Assembly: GCF_963676685.1 (NCBI RefSeq)
Contig: NC_092350.1
Coordinates: 71,424,001 to 71,488,000 of the forward strand
DNA: 64,000 nucleotides
Direction of reading: 5' to 3'
Source of the DNA: Mytilus edulis
Lineage: Eukaryota
Shown here: positions 4,188 to 45,969 of the stretch, in pieces
Numbering within the stretch: the first letter of the stretch is position 1
Layout: each line of letters starts with the position of its first letter
Made by a program: the position numbers and the translations under genes
Notes under the pieces: model-generated
What the model was told of the DNA's origin: nothing
Database searches by the model: none
Seen by the model: only the letters and a program-made list of their open reading frames with translations

Positions 4188-6772
4188 CTAATAAGATTTG
4201 ATTGCCCTTATAAGCTGTTCCCAAAAGACAACGTCACCGTACTCATCATTTGGATACTCAATATATGATTGACAATGAACCAGTTCCAGTATTTGAAGTG
4301 GAAGATCGCAAGCAGAGATTTGCTCGTAAAATACTAGGAAAAGAATGTTCTCACAATTGCGTTCATAGATACTCTCCATTTTAGCCATATTATATTCGAA
4401 CATACACCAGTACGAAGCTAAATATTTTGAAGACATTAAGACAATTGTTTTTCGGCTGTTATGAATTGCGGATGTAATGTTCGTGGCGATAACATTACCA
4501 GGAAGGAAATTACGCCTATGCAAGCACAATTGAACCCCACCGTTTTTTCTCTAATTTGTGAAGAAGTGTTTTGTGGACAAATGTATGATCTTCGTTGGCA
4601 TATGACACGAAAGCATCATACATATATAGTCTTTCATCTTTGTTGACGGATTTAGGTTCGGGGTCATGCCATTTGACTTTGACCATGTAGTAAAAATAGC
4701 GTAGTTTCCATCTATATCTGTAAACAATACCACCACAAAGTATAAAAATAAACATTAAAATTCCTGTCGCTACTCCAGTTATTAAACCTTCATATGACAT
4801 ACATTCTTTTTGTATTGTTTCGTAAAATTCGCTGGGGTTTCGTAGAAAACTGATTGTGTTTTGTGATGTCTTACATTCATATTCTTCACGATTATGAAGA
4901 TAAGTAGGTGTGTCAATTATCCATTTGACAAAAGACAGAGAATCACAATTACATACAAGATTATTACCACTAAGATCAACGGTTAGATTTGTGTTCATTT
5001 TTGCTATTGAGTCCAATCCGTTGATGGCATATTTACTCAGCATAGATATTCTATTTTTTCTTAAATTCAAAAACATGAGCTTTTTCATATGAGAAATTTT
5101 AAAGTTAATATCATCAATAATATTTTCACTGAGGTCTAATTTTTCAAGATGTTCTTGCTTTTTAAATAACATATTTGGTATATTTGATATTTTATTTTTC
5201 GAGAGATTAATGTGAACTACGTTCTGAAGATTCTGAAATATTTCTCCATCGACATCCATTGGTAGAATGAGTCCCAACAGATTATTTTGTAGTAGTAAAT
5301 ATCTTAAGTTGATAAAGTCTTCGCTGAAAAATATCTTTGAAACATTAGAACAAAACTTTGACGATAAGTCTAAAACTGTCATGTTATTTACATTAGTTAT
5401 AGGGCCTGTCCATGTGTGAAAGATATTGTCACTAAAATTAAGATTTGTTAATTCATTTGTGATGAATCCGAATTTTGGTATTTCAAATTTCATTTTGCTT
5501 GACGTAAGTGATATTTTTCTTAGTTTTCTTGGTACTGGCAGTCGGGCAACAAAATGATCAAACTTCTTTATCTGGAAATCAAAGCGTGAACGTAAATTAG
5601 ACAACCAGTTATTTTCAGAATTCATTGTAAAAGTATCTGTTTGAGAATCACATGTCTCTATGTAGCTTGTGAGAACATAATGTGAAGAGGAAATTTTGAA
5701 ATATCTAAAGATGTTATTGGTAATCTAACTAAATCAAAGAGATATTTGCCGAAGGAAAAAGCGTTGTCCCTTACAATCACACTTTCAAATGATTTCGGAA
5801 AGTACTGCACGGCCCCATATTTTACTCTTTGAATACGGTTTCCAGCGGCTTCAAATCTAACAAGAGATGTGTTTCTTAAATTTCGAATGTGGGAAGTCTT
5901 CAGTAGTGTGCTCATTTCGAAAGTACTATGAATGTAGTTTACTTTAAGAATTTTGATTGCGGTATATTGTAAATCTGTGGTTATATTTTCAAGCCCCGCG
6001 AACCTCAAACAAGTATTTAAAGAGACATCAAGCTCCGAAATATTTTTCAAACTTTCAAAAGTTCCTTTGTAGATTTATTGTATTTTGAATTTAGACAGAT
6101 TGATATGGGTTAATTGAGAAAGAGGCAATAATGTTGCCTCTGTAAGTGTGTTCATTGTGCAATTACCAGTAGAACCGTATAGATCTAAGCTTCTTAGGTG
6201 TTTCAAATGTATAAAATTGTCAGTAAGAACTGCAATTTTGTCCGATACATAATCTATTGACAGTGATTCTAATGTCCGAAGTCTCCATAAATCTGGCAAG
6301 AATGAAGTGTGGAAATTATTTTTCATATTCAAAATCTTCAAGTTCTCCAAAAAATGAAAGGCAGAACTTTCAAATGACATGTTTTCATATTTCAAATTGT
6401 TGGCTATGAGATCTAACGAAAGTAAATTATTGAGTCCTTTGAACGTGTTTTTGCGTATTTTACTTATTCTATTGAAAGACAGATCCAAAAACTTCAATAA
6501 ATAATTTCCTTCGAAAATCCCATCTTGTATTGTATTGATTGCATTATTTTGCAGCGATAAATCTTGAAGATTGTTTTGTAATCTAGGTATAAGAAGTAGA
6601 TTCTTGTTGGAACAATCCGCTAGAAGTTCATTTGAATCATGAATATTTTTGCAAATACAGGAACTAGCGAACTGACATTCTGTCCATTCCTTCAGCTCAT
6701 GGACTCTGTTGTTGTCACAACTAGCTTGAAGTATAAAAGCAGCAACCAGGAAATAAGAACGTTTGATGGTAC
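4188..6772 (-). pseudogene. TLR: TLR-A: Toll-like receptor pseudogene (LRR-TM-TIR), recent duplicate of TLR-C
   Basis: ORF fragments 6075..6791, 5658..6050, 4516..5625 and 4188..4529 together make a full TLR (LRRNT CQFASSCIC, LRRs, LRRCT NNLVCNCDSLSFVKW, TM, TIR). Lesions: TAT>TAA nonsense at 6075-6077, 1-nt deletion near 5697, +1 in the T run at 4543-4548. Phase-1 acceptor (TCTTCTTCATAG|GT) at 6773/6772; no matching ATGT|GT exon found upstream. Confidence 0.9.
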
Positions 6773-8287
6773 CTATGAAGAAGATATGCATACTTATGAT
6801 TTTGAATTGTCTTAGATAGATGTGATGTTAATAATTAAAAAAAACTAATATGCGTTACCAATGGTTAAAGGAAAAAAAGCTAGAAAAAATAATTGAATGC
6901 AAATTTTTAGGCTAAACTAGTTTATTTAAACATGCAAACCATATAGTTTTGATGTTGATCGAGCGATATGACGTTTTGGCGTATATCCTTTCGGATTTGG
7001 GTTCTCAATACTTTACAACTTTGTGCTTTTTTTAGCCTTACAATTTTATTACATTTTATTCTTTATTCACGCGTGACTTATGGGTTGTTGATTGTACAAA
7101 TACATAATTGAGTTTTTTGTAAATATCGTTAGCCTTTTGTGTAATATGCCTACTGAGCTTTATGTATATTCTCGAATATTTTTTAAGATTACTTTCCATC
7201 TCGCTTTTGTAATTCATCTTTTTTAATCAAAATTGCTCATCGAATATTCAAGCCTATCTCAGCGAAAGTTTCCTATATATCATAAATGGAACTCGAAAGA
7301 AATCAGTTGAAAGGTTAAATCAAATATGAGCTAAAGAACATTCAATTAAAAGATTTCTAAATACTTTTGGATTATATAGCTAATATAGAAAAGAAGAGGT
7401 GGTCTGATTACCAATGATACAACTCTTCAAAAGAGACTGAATAACACAAAAATTATCAACATCTCAAACATCTATAGGTCACCGTTCGGCATTCAACAAT
7501 GAGCAAAAGCAATCTATAAAATATTTTATAAAGACCATAGTGGTTCAATCTATTGGAAATTAGATACTCACAAAATTCACAGAATAATTATTGTATCCTT
7601 AAAATTTAATGTCAATACAAGTGCTTATTATTTGGCCATGATACCGTCTGGAACGAACATTCAGCAGCATTGGAATATAATCAGGAATCATATGAGATAG
7701 ATTTGGCATGATTTTTATTGGACCAATTTTCCAGCAGTCAGCAACTGATATAACATTAAAGCAAGTATAGGTCAACGTACGTTATCATGAGCAAAACCCA
7801 TACTGGTTAGCGAAGCTATACAAAATTCTAGATGACAAAAGTAAAACAGTTCAAACTAAAATGATTTCGACTTGTGTCATGTACAAAGCAATGAACAAAG
7901 CACAAATTTGATACACAGCAACAAGCAAATAACCACGGACTTGGGACAGGCGTATACAGGATGTTATAATGTCATAAATGTTTGCAGTTACCCATCAAAT
8001 GCATAACTTTGGACAGCATGCATGAGCACACCATACACATCTATTGAATTGGGTCAAACTCCTCAAATCGATGATTTAAAGATTAGACAAAAATTACTGA
8101 TATCAGCGTAAACGTAGTTACAAAATTTAGTTGATGTGCCTGTTCAGCATAGTGTTTATGACAGATCTTTATTATTTTCTCTTTAATTTATTCCCACTCT
8201 TTTTCTTGTTCCGTGCGATTTAGAGCATGTCTTAAACATAGACACTTTTTTAATTTGTTGCACACATTTGACTTATGATGTCTTCTC

Positions 8288-8484
8288 AAGTGAGAGGTTT
8301 AGCTAGCTATAAAACCAGGTTCAATCCACCATTTTCTACATTAGAAAATGCCTGTACCAAGTCAGGAATATGACAGTTGTTATCCATTCGTTTGATGTGT
8401 TTGGACTTTTGATTTTGTCTTTTGATTTTTGATTTTCCTTTTTGAATTTTCCTCGGAGTTCAGTATTTTTGTGTTTTTACTTTT
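8288..8484 (+). mobile_element. Dispersed repeat (caagtgagaggtttagc...cctcggagttcag family), inserted in the TLR-A intron
   Basis: Second copy at 40138-40333, decayed copies near 1771 and 22738; absent from the TLR-C paralog near 30215; possible TSD ttctc. Confidence 0.8.
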
Positions 8485-9358
8485 TTCTCCTGTTAACGTT
8501 GATACATTACGACTGATTTTTATGGCAATATGAATCGCTGTACTGCTAGTACCCAGGCTTTATCTGGTTTAGTTGCCAAAATCTGAATGTTTCACTGATC
8601 AATGAATTCACTGCTATGTGAATATGACCTGTACAGATTAAGTAGACAATTGTATTTATCTTATTGAAGCCAGGAAAAGAAAAGGGCCATTAGACTCTAG
8701 TATAAGCGTAGATCACACATTTAGACATAAAGGTGCAATGTTTTCTTAAATAACAAATATTATTTTTAAGGATATCCAAACTTTTTCTAGATTTTATATC
8801 ATATAAGTCTTTTGTATTTTCCTTATTTTACATCCCTTTTAAGCATATGTTAGAATGAACAGTTGGATTATTTCTATGGTGAAAACAAAGCTTCTTTAAA
8901 CTTTGTTGTTGTTTTCTATATTTTCATGAAATACATACATATTGGGACTCTGTTTTGACATCCTTACATTACTAATCGTATGTTGTTCATTGATATATTT
9001 CTTTGAGCAATACCGATCCATAAATACACCTACAGTGCAAAAAAGTATGAATGAAATGGAAATTTTGAATTATATAAAAAAAAAGTTTAGTAATAAATGT
9101 TTAACAGAACCATTCAATCGTAATATGGACGTATGCTATAGGTTTTGACTACAGAAAGGGTCCGTTTGTCCGACAGCCGAATATTTAAACAATTTATTGT
9201 TTAATTATTCATCAAGAAGTTTTTATTATTGCTCGTCCTAAGCAAAGCTCTTGTAATTCAGTGACTGCGTATGGTTGTTATCAGTCATATTGTTTTCTGT
9301 TTATTGTTAATGAATTCACAGTAAAGCCCATTTGTTTACTTATTATAACAGAACATTT

Positions 9359-9472
9359 TCACTGGTTTTAAAGTGATAACCGTAACTGGAATTACGACTA
9401 TCCCAATATGGCGTGTGCAGATATAGGTAAAATCTTCACAGACATTTACGGTTATCACTTTAAAATCAGTGA
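9359..9472. mobile_element. ~114-bp MITE with ~27-bp terminal inverted repeats
   Basis: tcactggttttaaagtgataaccgtaa ... ttacggttatcactttaaaatcagtga; flanked by ttt on both sides. Confidence 0.7.
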
Positions 9473-10714: not shown

Positions 10715-10940
10715 TAAACTTATCATAAATACCCGGATTCAATTTTCTATTTACGCCTGACGCTTGTTTTGTAATCTAAAGACCTATTAATGACGCCCGA
10801 ATCAAAAATAGTTAAAAAGGCCAAAAAAGTACGAAGTTGAAGTGCATGAAGAACCAAAATTCCAAAAAGTTTTGGCAAATACAACTTAGGTTATCTATGT
10901 CTGAGGTAGAAAAGCCTTAGTATTTCAAACATTCAAAAGT
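10715..10940 (-). mobile_element. Decayed copy of a hammerhead-bearing (Penelope-like/retrozyme) repeat
   Basis: Homologous to 21435-21535 and 19735-19920 (acgcc.gacgc...tgacgc...aagttgaag...ccaaaattccaaaaagtt). Confidence 0.6.
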
Positions 10941-16790: not shown

Positions 16791-19360
16791 CTAGTAGGAT
16801 TTGATTGCCTTTTGAAGCTGTTCCCAAAAGACAACATCCCCGTACTCATCATTTGGATACTCAATATATGATTGACAATGAACCAGTTCCATTATTTTAA
16901 GTGGAAGATCGCAAGCAGACATTTGCTCGTAAAATACTAGGAAAAGGATGTTCTCACAGTTGCGTTCATAAATACTCTCCATTTTAGCCATATTATATTC
17001 GAACATACACCAGTACGAAGCTAAATAACTTGGAGACATTATTACAATAGTTTTCCGGCTGTTATGAATTGCGGATGTGATATTAGTAGCGATGTCATTT
17101 CCGGGTAGAAAATTCCGCCTATGCAAGCACAACTGAATATTACCGTTTTTCTCTAGATTATTGAGAAGTTTATGGTGGACAAATGTATCATCCTCATTTG
17201 CATATGACACGAAAGCGTCATACATGTATAGTCGTTCATCTTTGTTGTCGGAATTATGTTCGGGGTCCCTCCATTTGACCTTGACCATGTAGTAAAGATA
17301 GCGTAGTTTCCATCTGTATCGATAAATCATACCTCCACAAAGTATAAAGATAAACATCAATATTCCTGTCGATACTCCAATTATTAAACTTTCATATGAC
17401 ATGCATTCCTTTTGCAGTGTTTCGTAAACTTCTCTAGGGTTTCGAAAAAGACTGAGTGTGTTTTTTGATGTTTTACATTCGTATTTCTCCAAAAGATGAA
17501 AATGCGTTGGTGTGTTTACTATCCATTTGACGAAAGACAGAGAATCACAGTTGCAAACAAGATTATTTCCACTAAGATCAATAGTGAGATTTTTATTATA
17601 TTTGGCTATCGAGTCCAACTCGTTCATTGCATATTGACTCAGTGTTGATATTCTGTTATTCCTTACATTTAAAAACATGAGCTTTCTCATATGAGATATT
17701 TTAAAGTTGATTCCATCAATCATATTTTCACTGAGGTCTAATCTTTCTAAATTGTGTTGCTCTTTGAATACAAGATATGGTATATTTGCTATTTTATTTG
17801 TTGAAAGGTTAATGTACCCGACGTTTTTGAGATTTTGAAATATTTCTCCGTCAACATCCGTTGGTAGAACGAGACCTAAAAGATTGTTTTGAAGCAGTAA
17901 GCTTCTTAAATTGATGAAATCTGCATTAAAAAAATTCTTTGAAATATTTGAACAAAAGTTTGCCGAAAGGTCTAAATCAGTCAATCTTTTTATATTCGTT
18001 ACTGGGCCTGTCCATGTATGCAAGACATTATCACTTAGACTTAAATAGTTTAACTCATTTGCCATGAAACCTAAGCTGGGTATTTCAGAGTTCATGTAGT
18101 TGGACTTAAATAAAACTTTTTTCAGTTTTCCTGGCACAGGAAATGCAGATATGTTTTTCCAAATTTCAAACAAGGGAAGTTCATTAAAAAAAAAGTTGTT
18201 AATTAAATTAATTGTAACATTCTCCTCTCTAAGAGGACATTCCTCTACATAAGAGTTGAACACATTATGAGGAGAAAAATTATCCGAAATTTCTAGTGAT
18301 GTAATTGGCATAAACTGAAGATCAAGCACATATTTCCCTAAAGAAAAAATGTTGTCGCCTACATCCGCACTTGTTAAGGACGGAGGCAAATATTGTACCA
18401 TACCGAATTCTATTCTCTGAATACGGTTTCCAGCGGCCTCGAATCTTTCAAGTGACGTATTTTTTAAATTCCAAATATGGGAAATATTCAGTACTGTAGG
18501 CATTCCGAAAATACTATGAATATTGTTAACTTTAAGGATTTTAATTGCCGAGTATTGCAAGTCAGTGGTTATATTCTCAAGCGTTTCGAATCTCAAACAT
18601 GTATTTAAAGACACATCAAGGTTGGATATATTTCTTAATATCGCAAACGTTCCTTTGAAAATATGTTGTATTTTGCATTTGGATAAATTCAAATGAGTTA
18701 TTTGAGGCAAGAACACAAATGTTTTCTTTGTTAGTATAGTCATTTTGCAATTTCCTGTAATACCAGATAGATCTATACCTGTCAGTTTTTTTAAATTTGA
18801 AAATTTCTCGTCGAGAATTGCAATTTTGTCTACAATATAATCTATTGACAGTAATTCTAGTGACCGAAGTTTCCATAAATCTGGCACAAATGAGGTGTTG
18901 ACATTTCTTTTTAAATTCAAGCTCTTCAAGTTTTCAAGAAAATTAAAAGCTGAAATTTCAAACGACTTATTTTCATATTTCAAATCATTGTTGCTGAGAT
19001 TCAACGATATCAAATTTTGGAGTCCTTTGAACGAGTTTTTTCTTAAATAGCTTATTCTATTTAAAGACAAATCCAAAGTCGTTAGTAAAGAACTGTCTTT
19101 GAAAATCCCATCTTCTATTCTACTGATATTATTGTTTTGGAGAAACAATTTTTGAAGATTGTGCGGTAGCTTAGGTATACGAAGTAGTTCTTTTCCTGAA
19201 CAATCCGCTATAATATTTCCTGAACGAGGGACGTTTTGGCATCGACAAGAACTAGCGAAGTGACATGATTTCCATTCCTTTATCTCATGGAGTATTACAT
19301 GTTTGCAACTAATAAGTAATAAAAAGGCCGTAACAAGGATGTAAGGAAGGTTCATGTTCC
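16791..19360 (-). CDS. TLR: TLR-B: intact single-cysteine-cluster Toll-like receptor, main exon (857 aa with exon 1)
   Basis: 854-aa ORF with hydrophobic N-terminus, LRRNT (CHFASSCRC...DCSGK), LxxLxLxxN repeats, LRRCT (NNLVCNCD...YECK...C), TM (LIIGVSTGILMFIFILCGGMIY) and TIR (YDAFVSY, LHRRNFLPG, FWEQL). Acceptor TTTTCTCTGCAG|GG at 19361/19360. Confidence 0.95.
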
Positions 19361-19412
19361 CTGCAGAGAAAATAGGTAGTTATTATATTTCAGACTGACT
19401 TAGAAATGAAAT

Positions 19413-20914: not shown

Positions 20915-20918
20915 ACAT
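20915..20918 (-). CDS. TLR: TLR-B exon 1 coding part (ATG-T), intron 19361..20914
   Basis: Minus strand reads ATGT|GTAAGTAT; splicing gives in-frame ATG TGG AAC ATG AAC CTT (MWNMNL...). Same arrangement in paralogs C, D and E. Confidence 0.75.
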
Positions 20919-24530: not shown

Positions 24531-26133
24531 GATATTTGTGTATCAGTTTGGAACGTACCAGTCGACTATAATACATGTGTCAACAATTATTTTTTATATG
24601 ATACCTTTTTTGCCATTCTGTTCTGTACCAATTTATACAACATACTTACATGACATTCAAGTTTTAAATTTCAGAAATGTCACATCTGTGTAGAATTTGT
24701 GACCTTCGCCACATTAAATAGTCAGCAGTGGTTTGGTGTTTAAAATTTGACGAAACATTTTGTGTTAACTGCAGAGAACACCACTATTAATCAAAAGGTA
24801 CCAGAAAGCACAAAATTAAACCAACTGTTGATTATTAGAAATCACCTTGATAAGATTTCATTAGGCCAAATTTGTGCTTACCATTAAAAGATATATCAGA
24901 TACTTTGCAAATGCACGACCAACTTCGATTCTAGAACATAAATTTCAACTACCGCGAACACATGTTGGTTCTTAATACAGACACATCGTATCGGTCACCA
25001 TACTATCTAAAGTATCGATTTCAGCCGTTCATCCTTAACAAATCTTTTGAATCATTATTTGTGTCACACACGCAGAGTGCGCGGATAATAGAAATGAATT
25101 AATAAAGACTGTATAGCGCACAGTCTTCAGTCTCTTCTGTAGCGTTGTTTTTTACTCTAAATTCATTTTTTTTGTGGATACAAATTGATGTGGATTATGG
25201 AATGATTTTTACTTCGTGGATATGTGATACAAGTCTATAACAATTATATGTCGTTGATTATTTAATTCAATGTTAACTTAACCCAACAAATACATGAATA
25301 TCGTTATCAAAAATAAAGTTGTTTTTCTATTTTTTGCCAAGGCTCTGTAAATTTCTTTTCCACTTATGAGTTTGAATATTCTCTTGGCTTCTTATTCTGC
25401 GGTTTATATGTTTTAAATGGATTATCATATTATTCATTCATCCGTATCTCTCTGATTTTTCGTCAGCTAAAAATATCGCTCTAAACTGACAATCTACAAA
25501 ATGGATATACATGCTTTTGATACAAAATTATCGATCGCTATTCAGCTTCATTATTTATTTGATCTTTGAACCTCGATGGAATGTCCATATTCCGACCTGG
25601 CATTACTGTGCACTTACACATGATCTCCAGCTACTGAGAACGATCAATATAACAATACCAATAAAGGTCCTTATCTAATTGATTGTCAAAAGTTAGAAGG
25701 TGTAGATTTAACTAGTTTGTATCATAACAGGCTACCAACGGAATAAAAATCTCGTCCGAATATCTGCCTAGTAGTTTTGAACAAATGAAGATCATCTTAA
25801 CTTACTAACGTAAATGATGGGAAAAAACCCCAAAATATTTGTTAATCTTTTATTCAAATGTAAACTCTTTAAAGCACGGTATGTATTTAGTTTTATATAC
25901 ATGTATGTATTTAGTATGACAAAATTGTAACACAAATGGTTTACTGACATGAAAAGGAAATCTAGTATTTATATTTGCTAAAGCAATAGTTTATCTTTAT
26001 CAGGCGAAGTAATATTATTTACATTTTGTCTCTAAATAAAACATCTAACCTAACACAAATATAAACCCTAATGCATACCGGGAGTCCTTGTACATAATAA
26101 ACGATACATGGCGTTAAATAGAGGACATATTCA

Positions 26134-28705
26134 CTAGTACGATTTGATATTCCTTATAAGCTGTTCCCAAAAGACAACGTCACCGTACTCATCATTTGGA
26201 TACTCAATATATGATTGACAATTAACCATTTCCAGTATTTGAAGTGGAAGATCGCAAGCAGAAATTTGCTCGTAAAATACCAGGAAAAGAATGTTCTCAC
26301 AATTGCGTTCATATATACTCTCCATTTTAGCCATATTATATTCGAACATACACCAGTACGAAGCTAAATAATTTGAAGACATTATGACAATTGTTTTCCG
26401 GCTGTTATGAATTGCGGATGTAATATTCGACGCCTATGCAAGCACAATTGAACCCCACCATTTTTCTCTAATTTGTGAAGAAGTGTTTTGTGGACAAATG
26501 TATGATCTTCGTTGGCATATAACACGAAAGCATCATGCATATATAGTCTGTCATCCTTGTTGACGGATTTAGGTTCGGGGTCATGCCATTTGATTTGACC
26601 ATGTAGTAAAGAAAGCGTAGTTTCCATCTATATCTGTAAACGATACCACCACAAAGTATAACAATAAACATTAAAATTCCTGTAGTTACTCCAATTATTA
26701 AACCTTCATATGACATACATTCCTTTTGTATTGTTTCGTAAACTTTGCTAGGGTTTCGAAGAAGACTGACTGCGTTTTGTGATGTCTTACATTCGTATTA
26801 TTCACGAATCTTAAATTCACGAATCTGAAGATACGTAGGTGTGTCAATTATCTATTTGACAAAAAGACAGAGAATCACAATTACATACAAGATTATTTCC
26901 ACTAAGATCGACGGTTAGATTTGTGTTCATTTTGGCTATTGAGTCCAATCCGTTGATGGCATATTTACTTAGCATAGATATTCTATTTTTTCTTAAATTC
27001 AAAAACATGAGCTTTCTCATATGAGAAATTTTAAAGTTAATATCATCAATAATATTTTCACTGAGGTCTAATCTTTCTAGATGTTCTTGCTTTTTAAATA
27101 ACAGATTTGGTATATTTGATATTTTATTTTTTGAGAGATTAATGTGAACTATGTTCTGAAGATTCTGAAATATTTCTCCATAGACATCCATTGGTAAAAT
27201 GAGTCCCAACAGATTATTTTGTAGTAGTAAATATCTTAAGTTGATAAAATCTTCGCTGAAAAATATCTTTGAAACATTAGAACAGAAATTCGACGATAAG
27301 TCTAAAACTGTCATGTTATTTACATTTGTTATAGGGCCTGTCCATGTGTGCAAGATATTGTCACTAAAATTAAGATTTGTTAATTCATTTGTGATGAATC
27401 CGAATTTTGGTATTTCAAATTTCATTTTGCTTGACGTAAATGATATTTTTCTCAGTTTTCTTGGTACTGGCAGTCGGGCAACAAAATGAACAAATTGTTT
27501 GAGATGGAAATCAAAACGTGAACGTAAATTGGACAACCAGTTATTTTCAGAATTCATTGTAAAAGTATCTGATTGAGAATCACATGTCTCTATGTAGCTT
27601 GTCAGAACATTATGTGAAAAGGAAATTTCGGAAATATCTAAAGATGTTATTGGTAGTCTAACTAAGTCAAAGAGATATTTGCCGAAGGAAAAAGCGTTGT
27701 CCCTTACATTCACACTTTCAAATGATTTCGGAAAGTACCTAGCCGCACCATATTCTACTCTTTGAATACGGTTTCCAGCGGCTTCAAATCTAGCAAGAGA
27801 TGTGTTTCTTAAATTCCGAATGTGGGAAGTCTTCAGGAATGTACTCATTTCGTACGTACTATGAATGTAGTTTACTTTAAGAATTTTGATTGCGGTATAT
27901 TGTAAATCTGTGGTTATATTTTCAAGCCCCGCGAACCTCAAACAAGTATTTAAAGAGACATCAAGCTCCGAAATATTTTTCAAACTTTCAAAAGTTCCTT
28001 TGTAGATATATTGTATTTTGCATTTAGACAGATTTATATGGGTTAATTGAGAAAGAGACAATAATGTTGCCTCTGTAAGTATGTTCATTGTGCAATTACC
28101 AGTAGAACCGGATAGATCTAAGCTTCTTAAGTGTTTCAAATGTATAAAATTGTGAGTAAGAACTGCAATTTTGTCCGATACATAATCTATTGACAGTGAT
28201 TCTAATGTCCGAAGTCTCCATAAATCTGGCAAAAATGAAGTGTGGAAATTATTTTTCATATTCAAAATCTTCAAGTTTTCCAAAAATTGAAAGGCAGAAC
28301 TTTCAAACGACATATTTTCATATTTCAAATTGTTGGCGCTGAGATCTAACGAAAGTAAATTGCTGAGTCCTTTGAATGTGTTTTTGCGTATTTTACTTAT
28401 TCTATTGAAAGACAGATCCAAAAACTTCAATAAATAATTTCCTTCGAAAATTCCATCTTGTATTGTACTGATTGCATTATTTTGCAGCGATAAATCTTGA
28501 AGATTGTTTTGTTATATAGGTATAAGAAGTAGATTCTTGTTGGAACAATCCGCTAGAAGTTCTTCTGATTCATGAATATTTTTGCAAATACAGGAACTAG
28601 CGAACTGACATTCTGTCCATTCCTTCATCTCATGAACTCTGTTGTTGTCACAACTAGCTTGAAGTATAAAAGCAGCAACCAGGAAATAAGAACGTTTGAT
28701 GGTAC
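26134..28705 (-). pseudogene. TLR: TLR-C: Toll-like receptor pseudogene, main exon
   Basis: Fragments 28512..28724, 26844..28430, 26468..26716, 26382..26627 and 26134..26382. Lesions relative to TLR-A: TTA>TAA at 28512-28514, +1 A near 26861-26865 with a neighbouring TGG>TAG, 15-nt duplication near 26811-26825, GAA>TAA near 26800, 1-nt deletion near 26593, and a 28-nt deletion at 26429/26430 removing the TIR BB-loop. Acceptor TCTTCTTCGTAG|GT at 28706/28705. Confidence 0.92.
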
Positions 28706-30441
28706 CTACGAAGAAGATATGCATAATTATGATTTTGAATTGTCTTAGATAGATGTGATGTTAATAATGAATAAAACTAATATGCGTTAACAATGGTTAC
28801 GAAGGAAAAAAAGCTAGAAAAAATAATTGATTGCAAATTTTTAGGCTAAACTAGTTTTTTTAAACATGCAAACCATATTGTTTTGATGTTGATCGAGCGA
28901 TATGACGCTTGTACGTATATCCTTTCGGATTTGGGTTATCAATACTTTACAACTTTGTGCTTTTTGTGGCCTTACAATTTATTACATTACTCTTTATTCA
29001 AGCGAGACTTTTGGGTTGTTGATTGTACAAATACAAAATTGAGTTTTTCGTAAATATAGTTAGCCTCTTGTGTAATATGCCTACTAAGCTTGAAGTGAAC
29101 ATGTATTCTCGAATATTTTTAAAGATTACTTTCCATTTCGCGTTTGTAATTCATCTTTTTTTTTTATCAAAATTACTCATCGAATATTCAAGCCTTACTC
29201 AGCGAATTTCGTTTACATCATAAATGGAACTCAAAAGAAATCAGTTGAAAGGTTAAATCAAATATGAGCTAAAGAACGTTCAATTCAAAGATTTCTAAAT
29301 ACTTTTGGATTATATAGAAAAGAAGAGGTGGTCTGATTACCAATGATACAACTCTTCAATAGATACTGAAAAACACCAAAATTATCAACATCTTAAACAT
29401 CTACAGGTTACCGTTCGGCATTCAACAATGAGCAAAAGCAATCTATGAATTATTTCATAAAGACAATAGTGGTTAAATCTATTGGAAATTAGATACTCAC
29501 AAAATTCACGAAACAATAATTGTATCCTTAAAATTTAATGTCAATACAAGTGCTTATCGTTTGGCCATGATACTGTCTGGAACGAACATTCAGCAGCATT
29601 GGAATATAATATCAGGAATGATATGAGATAGATTCAGCATGATTGTTATTGGAACAACTTTCCGGCAGTCAGCAATTGATATAAAATTAAGCAACTATAG
29701 ATCATCGTACGTTATCATGAGCAAAACCCATACTTGTTAGCGAAGCTATACAAATTTCGAGATGAAAAAAGTAAAACAATTCAAACTGAAATTATTTCGA
29801 CTTGTGTCATGTACAAAGCAATGAACAAAGCACAAATTTGATACACAGCAACAAGCAAATAACCACGGACTTGGGACAGGCGTATACAGGATGTTATAAT
29901 GTAAAAAATGTTTGCGGGTACCCATCAAATTCCTAACCTTGGACAGCATACATGAGCACACCATACACATCGGTTGAATTGGATCAAACTCCTCAAATCT
30001 GTAATTTAAAGATAAGACAAGAATTACTGATATCAGTGTAAACCTAGTTACAAAATTTAGTTGGTGTGCCTGTTCAGCATAGTGGTTATGACAGATCTTT
30101 ATCATTCTCAGTTTAATTTATTCCCACTCTTTTTCTTGTTCCGTGCCATTTAGAGCATGTCTTAAACATAGACACTTCTTTAATTGTTGCAGAGAATATT
30201 TGACTTCTAATGTCTTCCCCCACTAACGTTGCTGTCTCAGAAACATATTTCCCTTAGCCAAATTTCATCGTAGTTGTCGAGATTAAGACAGTTTTGAATG
30301 AATATTTCCGTTACAATAAAATGTGATTTAAACGTGCATTTTATTTTTTACAGAGTTATCTCCCTGTAATGTTGTCTACCACCATAATTTAGGTTACATT
30401 ATACAAGGTTTTTTTAATCAGATAGCATATATTGTACTTAC

Positions 30442-30445
30442 ACAT
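30442..30445 (-). pseudogene. TLR: TLR-C exon 1 coding part (ATG-T), intron 28706..30441
   Basis: ATGT|GTAAGTAC on the minus strand; joins in frame as ATG TGT ACC ATC AAA (MCTIKRSYFLVAAFIL...). Flanking sequence resembles the TLR-B exon-1 region (20919-21045). Confidence 0.65.
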
Positions 30446-30464
30446 TGTCAGGTTTACTGAAGAT

Positions 30465-33897: not shown

Positions 33898-36455
33898 TTA
33901 GCAGGATTGAATAGTCCTTTTAAGCTGTTCCCAAAAGACAACATCTCCGTACTCATCATTTGGGTACTCAATGTAAGATTGACAGTGAACCAGTTCGAGT
34001 ATTTGAAGTGGCAGATCGCAAGTAGAAATTTGCTTGTAAAGTACTAGAAAAAGGATGTTTTCACAATCGCGCTCATATATACCCTCCATCCTAGCCATAT
34101 TATATTCAAACATACACCAGTATGAAGCTAAATAATATGGAGACATTATGACCATTGTTTTACGGCTATTGTGAATTGCGGATGTGATATTTGTGGCGAT
34201 ATCATTCCCAGGTAAGAAGTTCCGCTTGTGCAAACATAACTGAATTCCACCATCTTTCTCTAATTTATGAAGAAGTGTATTATGGACAAATGTTTGATCT
34301 TCGTCAGCATATGAAACGAAAACATCATACATATACATTCTCTGATCTTTATTGTCCGATTCATTATCAGTTTGATGCCATTTGACCTTGACTATGTAGT
34401 ATAAATAACGTAGTTTCCATCTAAATCTGTAGCTGATTCCACCAAAAAGAATAGAAATGAAAATCAATATTCCTGTCGTAATTCCAATTATTATCCCTTC
34501 ATATGACATACATTCCTTTTGAAGCGTTTTAAATATTTCTGTAGGGTTGTGAAGAATGATTGTATCATTTGACATTTTACATTCATATGTGTTTCGTCGA
34601 TAAAGATGTGTAGGTGTGGTTACCATCCATTTGACGAAAGATAATGAATCGCAGTTACATACAAGATTATTGCCACCAAGATCAACGGTGAAATTTGCAT
34701 TACTTTTGGCGACTAAGTCAAACTCTTTCATGGCAAATTGACCCAGTTTAAATATCTTATTATTCTTAACATTAACAAACATAAGCTTTTTCATATGCGA
34801 AACTTGAAAGTTGATATCTTCGATCAGGTTTTCACTCAGGTCTAATCTTTTTAAATTCTGTTGATTTCTAAAAAACATTTTTGGTATATTTGCTATTCTG
34901 TTTTTCGAAAGATTAATGTAATCAACGCTATGAAGATTTCTCAAAATTTCACCGTTGGTGTCTTTTGGTAAAACGAGTACTAAGAGGTTGTCTCGAAGAA
35001 TTATCTTTTTCAAATTTTTGAAATCTTCACTGAAAAATCTCTTTGAAACATTAGAACAAAAGTTCGAAGAAAGATCTAAAGAGATAAGATTTTCAACATT
35101 CTTAACCGGTCCTGTCCATGTATGCAAGACATTGTCACTGAAACTAGCTTTTTTAATGTTATTTTTCTTAAAACCGAAACTTGGTATTTCATAATTCAGT
35201 GCACTTGATCTCAATATAAATGTATTGAGTTTTTCTGGAACCAGAAATTTGAAATTGTTTTGATAGGGGTTCCATTGCCTGTAGGCGGACATGATTGAAA
35301 ATAACCAATTGTCATCGTAAATCAGTGTTTCAGTGTCTTTTCGAGGTATGCATTCCTCTAAGTAGCCAGTGAGCACATTGTGGGCAGAAAAAGAATCAGA
35401 AACATCAAGAAATGTTATATTTAGACCAAATACATCAAGCATATATTTGCCAATAGAAAAAACGTTGTCTCTAAAAGAAGCACTTCTGGCGGACTTTGGA
35501 AAATATTTTAATGCGCCATATTCTATTCTCTGAATACGATTTCCATCGGCTTCGAATCTCTTTAGAGATGTATTTCTCAAATTGGATATATGAGAAGTTT
35601 TTAGTATTGTACTCATTTCGAACAAACCATGAATATAGTTTACTTTTAGGATTTTAATTTCTGAATGTTGTAAATCCGCAGTGATATTTTCAAGCACTTT
35701 GAATCTCAAACATGTGTTAAAGGAAATGTCGAGCTCGGATAGATTTCTCATATTCTTAAAAGTTCCGTTGTATATAAATTGTATATGGCACTTAGATAAA
35801 GTTAAATTTGTTATTTGAGGTAAAAATGAAAAAGTCTCCGGTGTAAGTATATTCATCTTGCAATTACCAGTATGACCAGAAAGATCCAAAATTGTTAAGT
35901 GTTTTAAATATGCAAAATGTTTACCAAGATCTGCAAATGTGTCAGAAACAAAATTCATGGACAGCGATTCCAAAAATAAAAGTTCAGATAAATCTGGCAT
36001 AAATGAAGTGTTGAAATTCTTTTTCAAATACAAATTCTTTAAGTTTTTCAGATAATAAAAAGTTGAAGAGCCAAACCTGTCTTCGTGTTTCAAATCGTTG
36101 TGGCTGAGATTTAGGGAAACTAAATTGTTTAATCCTTTGAACGAGTTTTTTCTTAGTTGTTTGATTCTATTAAAAGACAAATCCAAGGACTCCAATAAAA
36201 TACTTTTTTCGAAAATCCCATCTTCTATCATAATTATATTGTTATTTCGGAGAGATAAATCCTGAAGATTATTCGTCAGCCTAGATATATTGGTCAGACC
36301 TTTATCAGAACAATCTGCTTTAAAAAGTCCTGAACTGGGAACTCTACTGCATTTACAATAATTCGAAAACTGGCATGCTTCCTGCTGGAGGAATTTAGAA
36401 TTTTCGCAACAAACTTGTCTCATAAAGGCAACAACAAGGCTGTAATAAATGATCC
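33898..36455 (-). CDS. TLR: TLR-D: intact Toll-like receptor, main exon (853 aa with exon 1)
   Basis: 841-aa ORF with LRRNT, LRRs, LRRCT, TM and TIR. It lacks a signal peptide unless extended to the acceptor TTTTCTCTGCAG|GG at 36456/36455, which gives MWIIYYSLVVAFMRQVCC. Confidence 0.95.
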
Positions 36456-37639: not shown

Positions 37640-37643
37640 ACAT
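37640..37643 (-). CDS. TLR: TLR-D exon 1 coding part (ATG-T), intron 36456..37639
   Basis: ATGT|GTAAGTATG on the minus strand; the phase-1 join restores a hydrophobic signal peptide. Confidence 0.8.
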
Positions 37644-40137: not shown

Positions 40138-40333
40138 CAAGTGAGAGGTTTAGCGCTATGAAACCAGGTTCAATCCACAACTTTCTTCATTTGAAAATGC
40201 CTGGACCAAGTCAGGAATATGACAGTTGTTTCCATTCGTTTAATATATTTTATCGTTTGATTTTACCGTTTGATTAGGGACTTTCCTTTTTGAATTTTCC
40301 TCGGAGTTCAGTTTTTTTGTGATTTTACTTTTT
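40138..40333 (+). mobile_element. Dispersed repeat, same family as 8288-8484
   Basis: caagtgagaggtttagc...ccaagtcaggaatatgacagttg...cctcggagttcag. Confidence 0.8.
40277..40286 (+). promoter_or_regulatory. Perfect NF-kB consensus site GGGACTTTCC (function untested)
   Basis: Exact match to the canonical kB decamer; lies inside a repeat about 2.6 kb upstream of TLR-D exon 1. Confidence 0.35.
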
Positions 40334-42840: not shown

Positions 42841-45404
42841 TTAGGATTTAACTGCCCTTGTGAGCTGTTCCCAAAAGACAACATCACCATACTCATCATT
42901 CGGATACTCAATGTAAGATTGACAGTGAACCAGTTCGAGTATTTGAAGTGGAAGATCGCAAGCTGAAATTTGCTTGTAAAATATCAGGAAAAGGATGTTT
43001 TCACAATTGCGCTCATATATGCTCTCCATTCTAGCCATATTATATTCGAACATACACCAGTAAGAAGCTAAATATTTCGACGACATTATGACAATTGTTT
43101 TTCGGCTATTGTGAATTGCAGAAGTGATATTGGTGGCGATGTCATTTCCGGGTAAAAAATTCCGCTTGTGCAAGCACAACTGAATTCCTCCAATTTTCTC
43201 TAGTTTATAGAGAAGTATATTGTGGACAAATGTTTGATCGTCGTCGGCATATGAAACGAAAGCATCATACATATATAGTCTTTCATCGATGTTGCCTGAC
43301 TCATTACCGCGTTGATGCCATTTGACCTTGACCATGTAGTATAGATATCGTAGTTTCCACCTGTACCTGTAGCTGATTCCGCCAAGAAGAATAAACATAA
43401 ACATCAATATTCCTGAAGTTAATCCGAAGATTATACCTGCATAGGACATACATTTCGTTTTTAGGGTTTCATAAACTTCTTTTGGATTGCGAAGGAAAAT
43501 TGTTGTATCATTTGAAAGTTTGCATTTATATTTCTTCCTACGATAAAGACGTGTAGGAGTGTCGATCATCCAATGAATGAAAGACATGGAATCACAATTG
43601 CATACAAGATTATTGCCACCAAGATCAATAGTTAAATTCGTGTTTGTCGTGGCAACCGAGTCCAACGCGTCCATTGTAAACTTACTCAGTTTAGATATTC
43701 TATTATTTCGTAGATTCAAAACCATCAGCTTTTTCATATGAGAAATTTTAAAGTTAATTTCATCGATCATGTTTTCACTAAGATCTAAATTTTCTAAATT
43801 GTGTTGTTTTTTAAAAAACAGAATTGGTATATTCGTTATTTTATTATTTGAAAGATTGACTGTACTGACGTTATGCAGATTCTGAAATATCTCTCCGTCA
43901 CTATCTGTTAGCATCACTTGTCCTAGAAGATTGTTTTGCAGTTGTAAGTATTTCAAATTTATAAAATCTTTACTGAAAAATGATTTTGAAACATTGGAAC
44001 AATAGTTAGATGATAAATCTAAAAAGGTCAGGTTTTTCACATTGGTTACTGGTCCTGTCCAGGTATACAAGACGTTGTTACTAAAACTAAGACTGTTTAA
44101 TTCATTTTCAGTAAAACTGATTTTTGATATTTCATATTTCAGTGTACTTGATGAAATTAAAAATGTTTTCAGTTTGTTTGGAACCGGAATAATGAAATCC
44201 GAATCCTTAGATTTTGTTTTCACGTAAAAAGACACTTTGTCAATCAAGTTGTTTTCGGACTTCACTGTCACAGTATCTTCTGGGTCAATACATTCCTCTG
44301 TGTAGGACGTAAAAACATTGTGTGAGGAAAACGATTCAGAAACATCTAGGAATGTGATACAAATACTCATTAAATCAAACAGATATTCCCCAATAGAAAA
44401 AACATTGTCCCTAAAATTGCCACTTTCGAAGGAATCTGGAAAATATTCTAACGCACCAGATTCTATCCTCTGAATACGGTTTCCTGCGGCTTCGAATCTA
44501 ACCAGTGATGTTTTATTTAGATACCAAATGTGAGAAGTCTTCAGTATTGTGCTCATTGCAAAAATATCATGAATATAATTTACTTTCAGTATTTTTATTG
44601 CCGAATTTTGCAAATCTGTGGTTATATTTTCAAGTGCATCAAATCCCAAACAGGTATTGAGGGAAACATCAAGCTCGTAAATGTTTTTCATATTTGTAAA
44701 CGTGCCAATGTAAATATATTGTATTAAACATTTTGATATGTTTAAATGAGTTATTTGAGGTAAGAAAAATAATGTTACCGGTGTAAGTATATTCAATTTG
44801 CAATTACCAGTAAAACCTGATAGATCTATAATTGATAGGTTCTTACAATTAACAAATTTTTCATCAAAAATTGCAATTTTGTCCGTAATGAAATCCATTA
44901 ACAACGTTTCAAGTGATTTTAGCTTCGATAAATCTGGCACGAATGAAGTGTTGGAATTATTTTTCAAATTCAAGCTTCTTAAGTTCTCCAAGAAATAAAA
45001 GGACGTAGAATCAAACGATATTTCTTCATAATTCAAATTGTTGTTGCTGAGATCTAAGTAGAGTAAATTGTGTAGTCCTTTAAATGATTGTTTTCTTATT
45101 TGTTTTATTCTATTAAAAGACAAATCCAAGGACTTCAGCAAATTGTTTTCCTCGAAAATACCATCTTTTATTATACTGATGTAATTTCTTTGGAGAGATA
45201 AATATTGAACAACGTTCGGCATCCTTGGAATACAGAATAGGTTTCTGCCAGCACAATTTGCTACAAGTAACTTTGAACCGGGAACTGTTATGCAGACACA
45301 AGAACTAGCAAATGGACATGCCTTCTGTGCATAGACTCCTGGATTTCCACAACATACTAGTAACACACAAACAGGAACAAAGCTGTTGATGAGATTTATT
45401 TTCG
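42841..45404 (-). CDS. TLR: TLR-E: intact Toll-like receptor, main exon (855 aa with exon 1)
   Basis: 860-aa ORF 42841..45423 with full LRR-TM-TIR architecture. Its first codons overlap a polypyrimidine tract and acceptor TTGTTTTTGTTTGCAG|CG at 45405/45404. Confidence 0.95.
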
Positions 45405-45962
45405 CTGCAAACAAAAACAACATTTATTAACAACAAAAATCTGGTACATTGGGATTGTTCCTTGTTTGATGTTGTAAATTACTGTTTAAAAACAAGTAGT
45501 CTTTACCTCAGGAATAAATAACCTATGCTATATTTTAAAAACCTCAATTCTTTTATACTTCTTATTTTATTATTTGGCTTTTTTTTAAAGATATTTGATC
45601 GTCGTTGATAAGGTTTTTGCATTGATGATCAGACTCGTAAGTATCTGTTGCCTTCATGCCGAGTTAAGAAAATTAGTTTTCAAAGTACTAATCCATCTCG
45701 TTTTTGTGAGTTTTCGACTGTTATTGTTTGTTGCAGGATGGAGACAGCTTTTTTGTGTGCAATCATGATCATGTTATTTAAGTAAGATTCGATTAAATTG
45801 AATGACATCGCTGAACAAATGTTAAAAAAAACTCGTAAATGACAGAAAGTAATGTTACAGTATTGAAAAAAATCCCATTAGTATCAGAAGATCAAAATAC
45901 AACATTTAATATCTCTCAAATTGCTTAACATATTTGTTAATTTTGAAACAAATAATACTCAC

Positions 45963-45969
45963 ACATCAT
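45963..45969 (-). CDS. TLR: TLR-E exon 1 coding part ((ATG)ATG-T), intron 45405..45962
   Basis: ATGATGT|GTGAGTATT on the minus strand; joins as ATG TCG AAA ATA AAT (MSKINLINSFVPVCVLLVCC). Confidence 0.75.

What the first reader, a model, noticed from the sequence alone, without database searches (positions are those of the whole stretch)
4188..45969. Five-gene tandem Toll-like receptor array undergoing birth-and-death evolution
Seen: five same-strand paralogs at 7-13 kb spacing, three intact and two disabled, with clearly diverged LRR ectodomains, near-invariant TIR domains and duplicated intergenic DNA of two different ages. Established: bivalves have large lineage-specific TLR expansions. 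Inference: this is a diversifying receptor cassette with variable sensors and a shared signalling module, and may vary in copy number between individuals.
Basis: partly seen in the sequence, partly recalled or inferred. Interest (0 to 1): 0.8.

Follow-up and report, generated by a model that had tools for sequence, protein, structure and literature searches.

The report
Mussel Toll-like receptor tandem gene cluster
This is a real row of five duplicated Toll-like immune-receptor genes (three usable, two dead) in the blue mussel genome, part of a larger cluster of a kind already described for mussels, so it is genuine but ordinary.

Summary
Five LRR-TM-TIR genes lie on the minus strand 7.8-12.6 kb apart. 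B, D and E have open frames. A and C are pseudogenes with unshared lesions.

The genome is Mytilus edulis, chromosome-scale contig C7. The array is larger than reported: a sixth minus-strand copy lies 7.5 kb left of the window. A plus-strand group of three full-length copies, a chimeric pseudogene and several fragments lies 80-190 kb to the right.

All copies, with their orthologues in four other Mytilus species, form one clade (100/100). The nearest other paralogues in the genome are 48% identical.

TIR conservation (82-88% amino-acid identity, not near-invariant) comes from purifying selection: omega 0.10 with ordinary dS of 0.74. It does not come from gene conversion or a shared module. The ectodomain has omega 0.28, peaking at 0.55-0.8 at residues 323-440, never above 1 when pooled.

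Contigs from runs labelled as three organisms carry A-type sequence. One keeps all three of A's lesions; another keeps the stop codon but lacks both frameshifts. A is therefore not an assembly artefact.

The start codon sits in an upstream micro-exon.

Saco et al. 2023 (PMC10279657) already describe tandem TLR duplication, domain-specific selection and presence/absence variation in Mytilus. Copy-number variation was not tested here.

The scan's notes hold no earlier TLR-array finding.

The parts
4188..6791 (-). Gene A: TLR pseudogene (homologue of the large coding exon). Lesions: stop at 6075-6077, 1-nt deletion at about 5697, 1-nt insertion in a T-run at about 4543-4548. No start micro-exon was found in place.
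   Evidence: Contigs of run X2 reproduce all three lesions. X8 has the stop but neither frameshift. X1 lacks the +1. No RNA reads in X21.
16791..19360 (-). Gene B, large coding exon (open, 854 aa from the in-exon ATG at 19355). A conserved splice acceptor lies just upstream.
   Evidence: Allele P0005 from an older M. edulis assembly is 98% identical and starts MW before this exon's residues.
20915..20918 (-). Candidate end of exon 1 of B: ATG plus one base, followed by a GTAAGT donor. Implied intron 19361-20914.
   Evidence: A 37-nt homologue with 2 mismatches lies 0.85 kb upstream of the twin gene, whose RefSeq model P0001 starts MMW.
26134..28724 (-). Gene C: TLR pseudogene. Lesions: stop at 28512-28514 and two further stops, +1 at about 26865, -1 at about 26593, 28-nt deletion at about 26429.
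30442..30445 (-). Candidate end of exon 1 of C (ATG+T, GTAAGT donor). It lies outside the block duplicated to A.
33898..36455 (-). Gene D, large coding exon. The in-exon ATG at 36423 lacks a signal peptide, but the frame stays open back to the acceptor at about 36455 and there encodes a hydrophobic leader.
   Evidence: M. galloprovincialis P0016 is 99% identical.
37640..37643 (-). Candidate end of exon 1 of D (ATG+T, GTAAGT donor).
42841..45423 (-). Gene E, large coding exon (open, 860 aa from the in-exon ATG). A possible acceptor lies at about 45405.
45963..45969 (-). Candidate end of exon 1 of E (ATGATG+T, GTGAGT donor).
3232..8285 (.). Younger duplicated block holding A. It pairs with 25168-30217 (holding C) at 92.1% over 5.1 kb, and 95.4% within the gene.
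25168..30217 (.). Partner block holding C.
1203..3218 (.). Older duplicated flank, 82-89% identical to 22352-25072. A third copy lies left of the window.
8287..8486 (.). Interspersed repeat of about 200 bp at the right edge of the A block. There are 20 copies in the 264 kb region, one of them at 40138-40333.
   Evidence: (summed contig depth about 1e6, loose ends at 8286/8287 and 8485-8488).

Best explanation
The window holds five members of a lineage-specific cluster of single-cysteine-cluster (V-type) Toll-like receptor genes on a chromosome-scale contig of Mytilus edulis.

Each gene has a tiny first exon (5' UTR, ATG and one base), an intron of 0.5-1.7 kb, and one large exon. The large exon encodes the leader, LRRNT, about 20 LRRs, LRRCT, one transmembrane helix and a TIR domain.

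The cluster grew by repeated segmental duplication, both tandem and at least once inverted, and loses members by decay. This is classical birth-and-death evolution.

Each gene carries its own TIR domain, kept similar by strong purifying selection. That fits all copies signalling through one adaptor, presumably MyD88 (inferred). The ectodomains are much less constrained, most of all the N-terminal cap and a central segment at residues 323-440. This would let the paralogues recognise different ligands (inferred).

A and C come from a younger duplication and were probably functional for most of the time since it. Each then decayed independently.
For: Domains and motifs:
- Pfam finds LRR_8 and TIR in all five genes.
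- Each of B, D and E has one LRRNT, one LRRCT, one TM helix and TIR boxes 1-3.
- The best solved relatives are TLR3, TLR7 and TLR5.

Species and annotation:
- The relatives are RefSeq and GenBank Mytilus TLRs. P0001 lies on a contig of 93,447,462 bases, the length of C7.

Cluster extent:
- Searches give a further minus-strand copy left of the window.
- They also give three full-length plus-strand copies, one chimeric plus-strand pseudogene and at least five fragments to the right.
- An inverted colinear duplicate of window 8765-26767 lies at window-scale coordinates 190549-174725, about 111-127 kb right of the window's end.

Phylogeny:
- The cluster and its Mytilus orthologues form one clade, 100/100.
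- An intact M. californianus gene (P0009, 862 aa) is the outgroup to A+C.
- The lineages have orthologues in M. coruscus, M. californianus, M. trossulus and M. galloprovincialis.

Selection:
- TIR: dN 0.07, dS 0.74, omega 0.10. Ectodomain: dN 0.23, dS 0.82, omega 0.28.
- pS is flat along the gene.
- Ectodomain and TM+TIR trees agree for every copy except the chimeric copy outside the window.
- A-C: dS 0.113, omega 0.27.

Lesions:
- A and C share no lesion.
- Other individuals' contigs confirm A's lesions and show stepwise decay.

Gene structure:
- A conserved acceptor precedes each large exon.
- Database models begin MW or MMW before this exon's residues.
- ATG+T followed by GTRAGT lies 0.5-1.7 kb upstream of B, C, D and E.

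Literature:
- PMC10279657 reports the same pattern for Mytilus TLRs.
Against: - No RNA evidence was obtained for B, D or E. Reads were laid on A. The exon 1 positions rest on motif, homology and database models.
- Pooled pN/pS never exceeds 1, so diversifying selection on the ectodomain is not shown. Only one small pairwise window (B and its twin, residues 361-430) gave 1.34.
- TIR dS is somewhat lower than ectodomain dS within the Z/A/B/C subclade (0.34 against 0.57 for Z-B). Best 150-nt windows there reach 96-97%. Minor old gene conversion in the TIR cannot be excluded.
- Function (ligands, adaptor) is entirely inferred.
Confidence: 0.9

Rival explanations
1. A and C are two haplotypes of one locus wrongly assembled in tandem, so the array has four genes and no young duplication.
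For: A and C are the most similar pair (95.4% in the gene), and mussel haplotypes are known to be very divergent. Depth in the assembled individual could not be measured, because all DNA runs offered were contigs.
Against: B and 9 kb of unrelated DNA lie between A and C. The neighbours that would then be allelic (B and D) are only 73% identical. A and C differ at 119 of 2574 aligned sites and share none of their nine or so lesions. A 2-kb contig of another run (X2) matches A at 99.85% across a stretch where A and C differ at 127 sites. A run labelled as a third organism carries an A-type copy with A's stop codon. The homologue of C's exon 1 and promoter lies on the other side of A, a rearrangement that no haplotype duplication would produce.
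Confidence: 0.03
2. The TIR domains are kept alike by concerted evolution (gene conversion), making a physically homogenised 'shared signalling module'.
For: The best 150-nt identity windows between non-sister copies all fall in the TIR (89-97%). TIR dS is lower than ectodomain dS in the Z/A/B/C subclade. One copy outside the window has a TM+TIR part of A/C type joined to an ectodomain of another lineage.
Against: Mean TIR dS (0.74) is close to ectodomain dS (0.82), and pS is flat at 0.35-0.55 to the 3' end. TIR and ectodomain trees agree for all window genes. The one chimera sits at the breakpoint of the inverted segmental duplication and carries a 1.2-kb insertion at the junction. It is therefore a rearrangement product, not a conversion tract.
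Confidence: 0.07
3. Ectodomain divergence is driven by positive (diversifying) selection for new ligand specificities, rather than by relaxed constraint alone.
For: pN/pS peaks at the N-terminal cap (0.65-0.8) and at residues 323-440 (0.55-0.8), against 0.2-0.35 in the flanking LRRs. B and its 91%-identical twin give omega 1.34 over residues 361-430. PMC10279657 reports episodic positive selection in the extracellular parts of Mytilus TLR subfamilies.
Against: No pooled window exceeds 1. The one pairwise value above 1 rests on 70 codons. No site or branch-site model could be run here.
Confidence: 0.4

Closest known systems
Mytilus V-type (single-cysteine-cluster) TLR subfamilies and their tandem duplications, as catalogued by Saco et al. 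2023 (Mol Biol Evol 40:msad133, PMC10279657)
   Same: Same genus, and the same species is included. TLRs of one subfamily are tandemly duplicated on M. edulis and M. coruscus chromosomes. Negative selection is stronger on the TIR, and variability and episodic positive selection are higher in the ectodomain. 30% of M. galloprovincialis TLRs show presence/absence variation.
   Different: That census took ORFs of more than 300 codons starting at ATG, on the premise that mussel TLRs are single-exon. It does not mention pseudogenes (0 occurrences). Here the start codon of this subfamily appears to sit in a separate micro-exon. Two dead copies, one chimera and several fragments belong to the cluster. 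I did not map this cluster onto their subfamily names V1-V5.
Oyster (Crassostrea gigas) innate-immune gene expansions (Zhang et al. 2015, Sci Rep 5:8693, PMC4346834)
   Same: Large lineage-specific expansion of TLR and other immune families in a bivalve, largely by tandem duplication.
   Different: A different family of bivalves. The closest Crassostrea protein is only 29% identical to B, so the expansions are independent.
Vertebrate TLR3/5/7/13/21/22-type receptors
   Same: Architecture LRRNT-LRRs-LRRCT-TM-TIR. They are the best solved-structure matches (7c76 TLR3, 7cyn TLR7, 3j0a TLR5).
   Different: Only 24-29% identity and no orthology. The RefSeq names 'toll-like receptor 4' and 'TLR13' are automatic best-hit labels.
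Birth-and-death multigene families (for example sea-urchin TLRs, vertebrate MHC and olfactory receptors)
   Same: Duplications of mixed age, pseudogenes and fragments beside working copies, and orthologous lineages retained across species rather than homogenised within a species.
   Different: Nothing of substance. This is a small and typical example.

Membership tests
Toll-like receptor (type-I membrane LRR-TIR receptor) | Extracellular leucine-rich-repeat solenoid | tested here: met
   Pfam LRR_8 at E 1e-30 to 1e-32 with 4-6 stretches in B, D and E, and hits in pieces of A and C. There are 18-21 LxxLxLxxN-like starts.
Toll-like receptor (type-I membrane LRR-TIR receptor) | Cysteine-capped ends (LRRNT and LRRCT) | tested here: met
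   Each of B, D and E has one Cx6CxC...C cluster at residues about 27-52 and one NNLVCNC cluster at about 595-603.
Toll-like receptor (type-I membrane LRR-TIR receptor) | Single transmembrane helix between ectodomain and TIR | tested here: met
   One 19-residue window has Kyte-Doolittle mean above 2.3, at residues about 653-679 in B, D and E.
Toll-like receptor (type-I membrane LRR-TIR receptor) | C-terminal TIR domain with boxes 1, 2 (BB-loop proline) and 3 | tested here: met
   Pfam TIR at E 1e-17 to 1e-19. YDAFVSY or YDVFVSY, LCLH(R/K)RNFLPG and FW are present.
Toll-like receptor (type-I membrane LRR-TIR receptor) | N-terminal signal peptide | tested here: inconclusive
   B has a hydrophobic leader after its in-exon ATG. 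D has one only if translation starts in the inferred upstream micro-exon. No RNA evidence and no signal-peptide predictor were available.
Toll-like receptor (type-I membrane LRR-TIR receptor) | Signals through a TIR adaptor (MyD88) after ligand binding | not testable with these tools
   Needs experiments.
V-type / single-cysteine-cluster TLR (as opposed to P-type / multiple-cysteine-cluster) | Only one LRRCT, next to the membrane, with no internal LRRCT-LRRNT pair | tested here: met
   The motif scan finds a single CxC LRRCT motif and a single LRRNT per protein.
Orthologue of vertebrate TLR4 (the RefSeq product name) | Closer to TLR4 than to other vertebrate TLRs, with one-to-one orthology | tested here: not met
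   The vertebrate hits are TLR13, 21, 22, 3 and 4 at 24-29% identity, in no consistent order. The best solved matches are TLR3, TLR7 and TLR5. The genes sit in a Mytilus-specific clade.
Birth-and-death multigene family | Duplicates of different ages in one cluster | tested here: met
   dS is 0.11 (A-C), 0.21 (B and its twin), 0.41-0.53 (Z-related pairs) and 0.8-1.0 (B/D/E).
Birth-and-death multigene family | Pseudogenes and fragments among working copies | tested here: met
   A and C in the window. One chimeric pseudogene and at least five fragments lie to the right of it.
Birth-and-death multigene family | Copies cluster by lineage across species, not by species (no concerted evolution) | tested here: met
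   Each lineage has orthologues in two to four other Mytilus species. Domain trees are congruent.

The most novel reading that the evidence does not exclude
The A block may be a dispensable, differently decayed element segregating across the Mytilus edulis species complex. A's stop codon is shared by runs labelled as two organisms, its two frameshifts are present in some and absent in others, and one contig in run X1 joins 3478 to 8358, which would remove almost exactly the A block. If this is real, the cluster carries trans-specific or introgressed presence/absence and pseudogene polymorphism. The dead copies might also serve as sequence donors to the live ones.
Probability: 0.12. Interest if true: 0.35.

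Novelty: already known. Interest (0 to 1): 0.2.

Why it matters
The finding gives a clean, coordinate-level example of how a bivalve builds and prunes its innate-immune receptor repertoire. The general picture is already published for Mytilus: tandem TLR expansion, a conserved TIR, a variable ectodomain, and presence/absence variation.

Three small points are of practical use:
- In this subfamily the start codon appears to lie in a separate micro-exon. ORF-only censuses will therefore mis-start or truncate such genes. D is an example, and so is its M. galloprovincialis orthologue, annotated at 652 aa.
- Pseudogenes and a breakpoint chimera belong to the cluster and should be counted in birth-and-death rates.
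- The TIR similarity needs no gene conversion to explain it.

Tried and rejected
**Explanations considered and rejected**
- Haplotype artefact for A and C: rejected.
- Gene conversion as the cause of TIR conservation: rejected as the main cause.
- Shared disabling lesions, which would mean a pseudogene was duplicated when already dead: none found. A-C omega of 0.27 argues both were constrained for most of their separate history.

**Steps that led nowhere or were limited**
Exon 1 was inferred from motifs and homology instead.
The DNA between window-scale +224 kb and the last copy (L005), and further left of the cluster, was not examined.
- The RNA raw-read run X21 gave no reads on A apart from two repeats. 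This is weak, because only about 6% of one run of unknown tissue was read.
- All DNA runs were Logan contigs, so depth and copy number could not be measured.
- Pfam finds nothing significant in ORFs 46936-47785 beyond a sub-threshold DDE_3 match.
- A word search of the scan's own notes found no earlier TLR-array finding.

**How sequences were handled**
All searches used the large exon alone.
- In one search a script read A and C through their lesions, dropping inserted bases and putting X at deletions, only to compute dN/dS.
Full report
**1. What is in the window**

A six-frame ORF listing shows long open frames only on the minus strand:
- 16791-19355 (854 aa), here called B
- 33898-36423 (841 aa), D
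- 42841-45423 (860 aa), E
- four adjoining shorter ORFs at 4188-6791, A
- a 528-aa ORF at 26844-28430, part of C

Pfam finds LRR_8, LRR_4 and TIR in B, D and E, and the same families in the pieces of A and C. The window has no N and about 31% G+C.

Stop-to-stop spacing is 12.6, 9.3, 7.8 and 8.9 kb.

**2. Whose genome, and how far the cluster runs**

The window is G000:C7:71424001-71488000 in a 1.37-Gb assembly. The word-based protein search returned Mytilus TLRs only at the top. One of them is 'toll-like receptor 4 [Mytilus edulis]' (P0001), on a contig of 93,447,462 bases, the length of C7. The genome is therefore M. edulis.

The genome-wide search and a tblastn over 264 kb of contiguous sequence show that the array is larger than five genes.
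- A sixth minus-strand copy, Z (75% identical to B), lies 7.5-10 kb left of the window.
- To the right, after about 83 kb, come decayed fragments at window-scale coordinates +128 kb, +132-134 kb, +150 kb and +157 kb.
- After those come plus-strand copies at +165 kb (L002), +171-175 kb (L003, broken), +183-185 kb (L004, 88% amino-acid and 91% nucleotide identity to B) and about +254 kb (L005).

The two groups are transcribed away from each other. The next most similar genes elsewhere in the genome are only 48% identical.

**3. Duplication structure**

Self-alignment shows three layers.

(a) A young block: 3232-8285 (A) matches 25168-30217 (C) at 92.1% over 5.1 kb. Identity is 95.4% inside the gene and 91-93% outside it.

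(b) Older direct duplication. The Z-to-A spacer matches the B-to-C spacer at 74-88%, and 1203-3218 matches 22352-25072 at 82-89%.

(c) An inverted colinear copy of window 8765-26767. This stretch covers the A-B spacer, B, the B-C spacer and the 3' part of C. The copy lies at +190549 to +174725, at 73-90% identity.
- It makes L004 the twin of B.
- It gives L003 a TM+TIR part of A/C type joined, across a 1.2-kb insertion, to an ectodomain of another lineage.

The remaining gene pairs are 73-76% identical, and only within the genes. 'Duplicated intergenic DNA of two ages' is thus confirmed, and the true history has more layers.

**4. Gene structure**

Just upstream of each large ORF lies a polypyrimidine tract followed by (C/T)AG.

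Database models of the orthologues and alleles begin MW, MMW or MHKMW before the residues this exon encodes (P0001, P0002, P0003, P0005, P0006, P0009).

A scan for ATG plus one base followed by GTRAGT on the minus strand found six sites in 64 kb. Four of them lie 0.5-1.7 kb upstream of E (45969-45963), D (37643-37640), C (30445-30442) and B (20918-20915).

B's site sits in a 37-nt stretch that recurs, with two mismatches, 0.85 kb upstream of L004.

The start codon therefore lies in a micro-exon, and the second codon is completed by the first two bases of the large exon.

This matters for 'three intact'. D's in-exon ATG would give a protein without a leader. However, the frame is open back to the acceptor and there encodes a hydrophobic segment.

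This structure is inferred from sequence and from others' models.

A has no such exon in place. The A/C homology ends at 8285/30217, before C's candidate exon 1. The homologue of C's exon 1 region (30282-32153) lies on the other side of A, at -1972 to 1153.

**5. The two pseudogenes**

The references were an intact M. californianus orthologue (P0009, 862 aa) and each pseudogene against the other.

Lesions in A:
- a stop at 6075-6077
- a 1-nt deletion at about 5697
- a 1-nt insertion in a T-run at about 4543-4548

Lesions in C:
- a stop at 28512-28514, plus two further stops
- a 1-nt insertion at about 26865
- a 1-nt deletion at about 26593
- a 28-nt deletion at about 26429, inside the TIR

None is shared. 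A-C divergence is dS 0.113 and dN 0.030, omega 0.27. This is far from neutrality: 60.5 non-synonymous against 54.5 synonymous differences, where sites stand at 3.9 to 1. Most of the divergence therefore arose under constraint, and both copies died late and independently. Import of constrained differences by conversion from live paralogues is an alternative that I cannot exclude.

**6. Are A and C real?**

The one read-laying run was used on 3001-9000, with contigs from three DNA runs labelled as three organisms and from three studies, plus one RNA raw-read run.
- Run X2 has a 2,004-nt contig over 5498-7501 with 3 differences. A and C differ at 127 sites there. X2 also shows no change at any A lesion.
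- Run X8 has a 676-nt contig over 5450-6124. It keeps A's state at 25 of the 36 A/C differences, including the stop codon. It carries the extra base that A lacks at about 5697 and lacks A's extra base at 4543.
- Run X1 also lacks that extra base at 4543.

A is therefore a real locus in several individuals. Its stop codon is the oldest lesion and the frameshifts are younger.

These results add to B lying between A and C and to the rearranged exon 1 region. Together they refute the two-haplotype reading, as far as contigs can.

Depth in the assembled individual could not be measured.

The RNA run showed no reads on A outside two repeats. That is weak evidence, because only about 6% of one run was read.

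**7. One clade?**

A DNA tree of the ten full-length copies has all seven inner branches starred.

A protein tree of 39 rows used genome paralogues, Mytilus relatives, a scallop and an abalone.
- The cluster copies and their orthologues form one clade with 100/100 support.
- A+C (100/99) has the M. californianus gene as outgroup.
- B pairs with an older M. edulis allele.
- L004 pairs with an M. galloprovincialis protein, and D with an M. galloprovincialis protein at 99%.
- Z pairs with M. trossulus, M. californianus and M. coruscus orthologues.

Most duplications therefore predate the Mytilus radiation. The A/C duplication postdates the split from M. californianus.

**8. Selection by domain**

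Nei-Gojobori estimates over the seven open copies:

| Region | dN | dS | omega |
|---|---|---|---|
| TIR | 0.071 | 0.74 | 0.10 |
| TM + juxtamembrane | - | - | 0.14 |
| Ectodomain | 0.23 | 0.82 | 0.28 |
| Residues 361-430 | - | - | 0.40 |

In 30-codon windows pS is flat (0.35-0.60) from end to end. pN/pS peaks at the N-terminal cap (0.65-0.8) and at residues 323-440 (0.55-0.8). It falls to 0.02 at residues 740-769.

Amino-acid identity among B, D and E is 58-61% in the ectodomain and 82-88% in the TIR.

Ectodomain and TM+TIR trees agree for every copy except the chimeric L003.

The TIR is conserved by purifying selection acting on each gene separately. It is not a shared or homogenised module.

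The central peak agrees with the separate note on this window about a hypervariable mid-ectodomain segment (s1-832709).

Positive selection is not shown. Only B against L004 over 70 codons gives 1.34.

**9. Family membership**

B, D and E each have one LRRNT cluster, about 20 LRRs, one LRRCT, one TM helix and TIR boxes 1-3. They are single-cysteine-cluster (V-type) TLRs.

The best solved relatives are TLR3, TLR7 and TLR5. Vertebrate hits are 24-29% identical in no consistent order. The RefSeq name 'toll-like receptor 4' is therefore a label and does not indicate orthology.

**10. What is known**

Saco et al. 2023 (PMC10279657) analysed TLRs of 85 metazoans. They predicted M. edulis, M. coruscus and M. 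galloprovincialis TLRs de novo. Their results:
- TLRs of one subfamily are tandemly duplicated on M. edulis and M. coruscus chromosomes.
- Negative selection is stronger on the TIR.
- Variability and episodic positive selection are greater in the ectodomain.
- 30% of M. galloprovincialis TLRs show presence/absence variation.

Zhang et al. 2015 (PMC4346834) showed the same kind of expansion in the oyster. The finding is therefore a correct recognition of a published phenomenon in a genome whose genes are already annotated.

The details added here are small:
- the micro-exon start, whereas that census assumed single-exon genes starting at an in-frame ATG
- the pseudogenes, the word being absent from that paper
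- the inverted duplicate with its breakpoint chimera
- the test that excludes conversion as the cause of TIR similarity

**11. Limits**

- The reads tools allowed one search and one laying.
- The large representative-protein search, structure prediction and fold search were not used, because family scans and the word search left nothing open.
- Copy-number variation between individuals remains untested here. The only hint is one X1 contig joining 3478 to 8358, with 21 nt on its shorter side inside a high-copy repeat. That is not reliable.

Noticed in passing
outside the window: G000:C7:71413960-71416530 (-), 71552314-71581856 (+, fragments), 71589332-71609689 (+), 71677706-71680258 (+): The TLR cluster continues on both sides of the window. 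There is one more minus-strand copy on the left. On the right is a plus-strand group with three full-length copies, one broken copy and at least five fragments. The two groups are transcribed away from each other.
   Followed up: yes
window 8765-26767 against G000:C7 71598725-71614549 (inverted): An inverted colinear segmental duplication (73-90% identity) mirrors B and the 3' part of C. Its breakpoint falls inside a gene. It yields a chimeric pseudogene (L003) whose TM+TIR part is of A/C type and whose ectodomain belongs to another lineage, with a 1.2-kb insertion at the junction.
   Followed up: partly
window 20915-20918, 30442-30445, 37640-37643, 45963-45969 (all minus strand): The start codon of these TLRs appears to lie in a micro-exon (ATG plus one base, GTRAGT donor) 0.5-1.7 kb upstream of the large exon. 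ORF-based TLR censuses that assume single-exon genes would mis-start or truncate such genes.
   Followed up: partly
window 25618-25621 (minus strand), 0.5 kb downstream of C's stop: A second exon-1-like site (ATG+T, GTAAGT) has a conserved counterpart about 0.5 kb downstream of L003 in the inverted copy. It may be an alternative distal first exon of B and L004, or a relic.
   Followed up: no
window -1972 to 1153 against 30282-32153: The homologue of C's candidate exon 1 and promoter region lies on the downstream side of A rather than upstream of it. A has no first exon in place.
   Followed up: partly
window 8287-8486 and 40138-40333: An interspersed repeat of about 200 bp has very high copy number (summed contig depth about 1e6, abundant in RNA reads, 20 copies in 264 kb). 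One copy sits exactly at the right edge of the A/C duplicated block.
   Followed up: partly
window 7401-7600: A second repeated element, with contig depth 1,000-5,000 against about 10-50 around it.
   Followed up: no
window 3478 | 8358 (run X1): One contig joins these two places, skipping 4,879 bases, which is nearly the whole A block. Only 21 nt lie on the shorter side and that side is in the high-copy repeat, so this is an unreliable hint of a deletion allele.
   Followed up: no
window 46936-47785 (minus strand): Two adjoining ORFs carry a sub-threshold DDE_3 match (E 0.012). They are probably a decayed Tc1/mariner-type transposase just upstream of E.
   Followed up: partly
window 50754-51549 and 52639-54291: Tandem repeats. 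The first has units of 128-263 bp (81-86% matches). The second is an array with a period of about 500 bp, whose copies are 86-91% alike.
   Followed up: no
protein P0014 (older M. edulis assembly, allele of Z) and window about 4543-4548: The older assembly's Z allele ends in a frameshifted tail at the same homopolymer site, after LEK in the TIR, where A has its +1. This is either a mutational hot spot or a homopolymer error in that older assembly.
   Followed up: no
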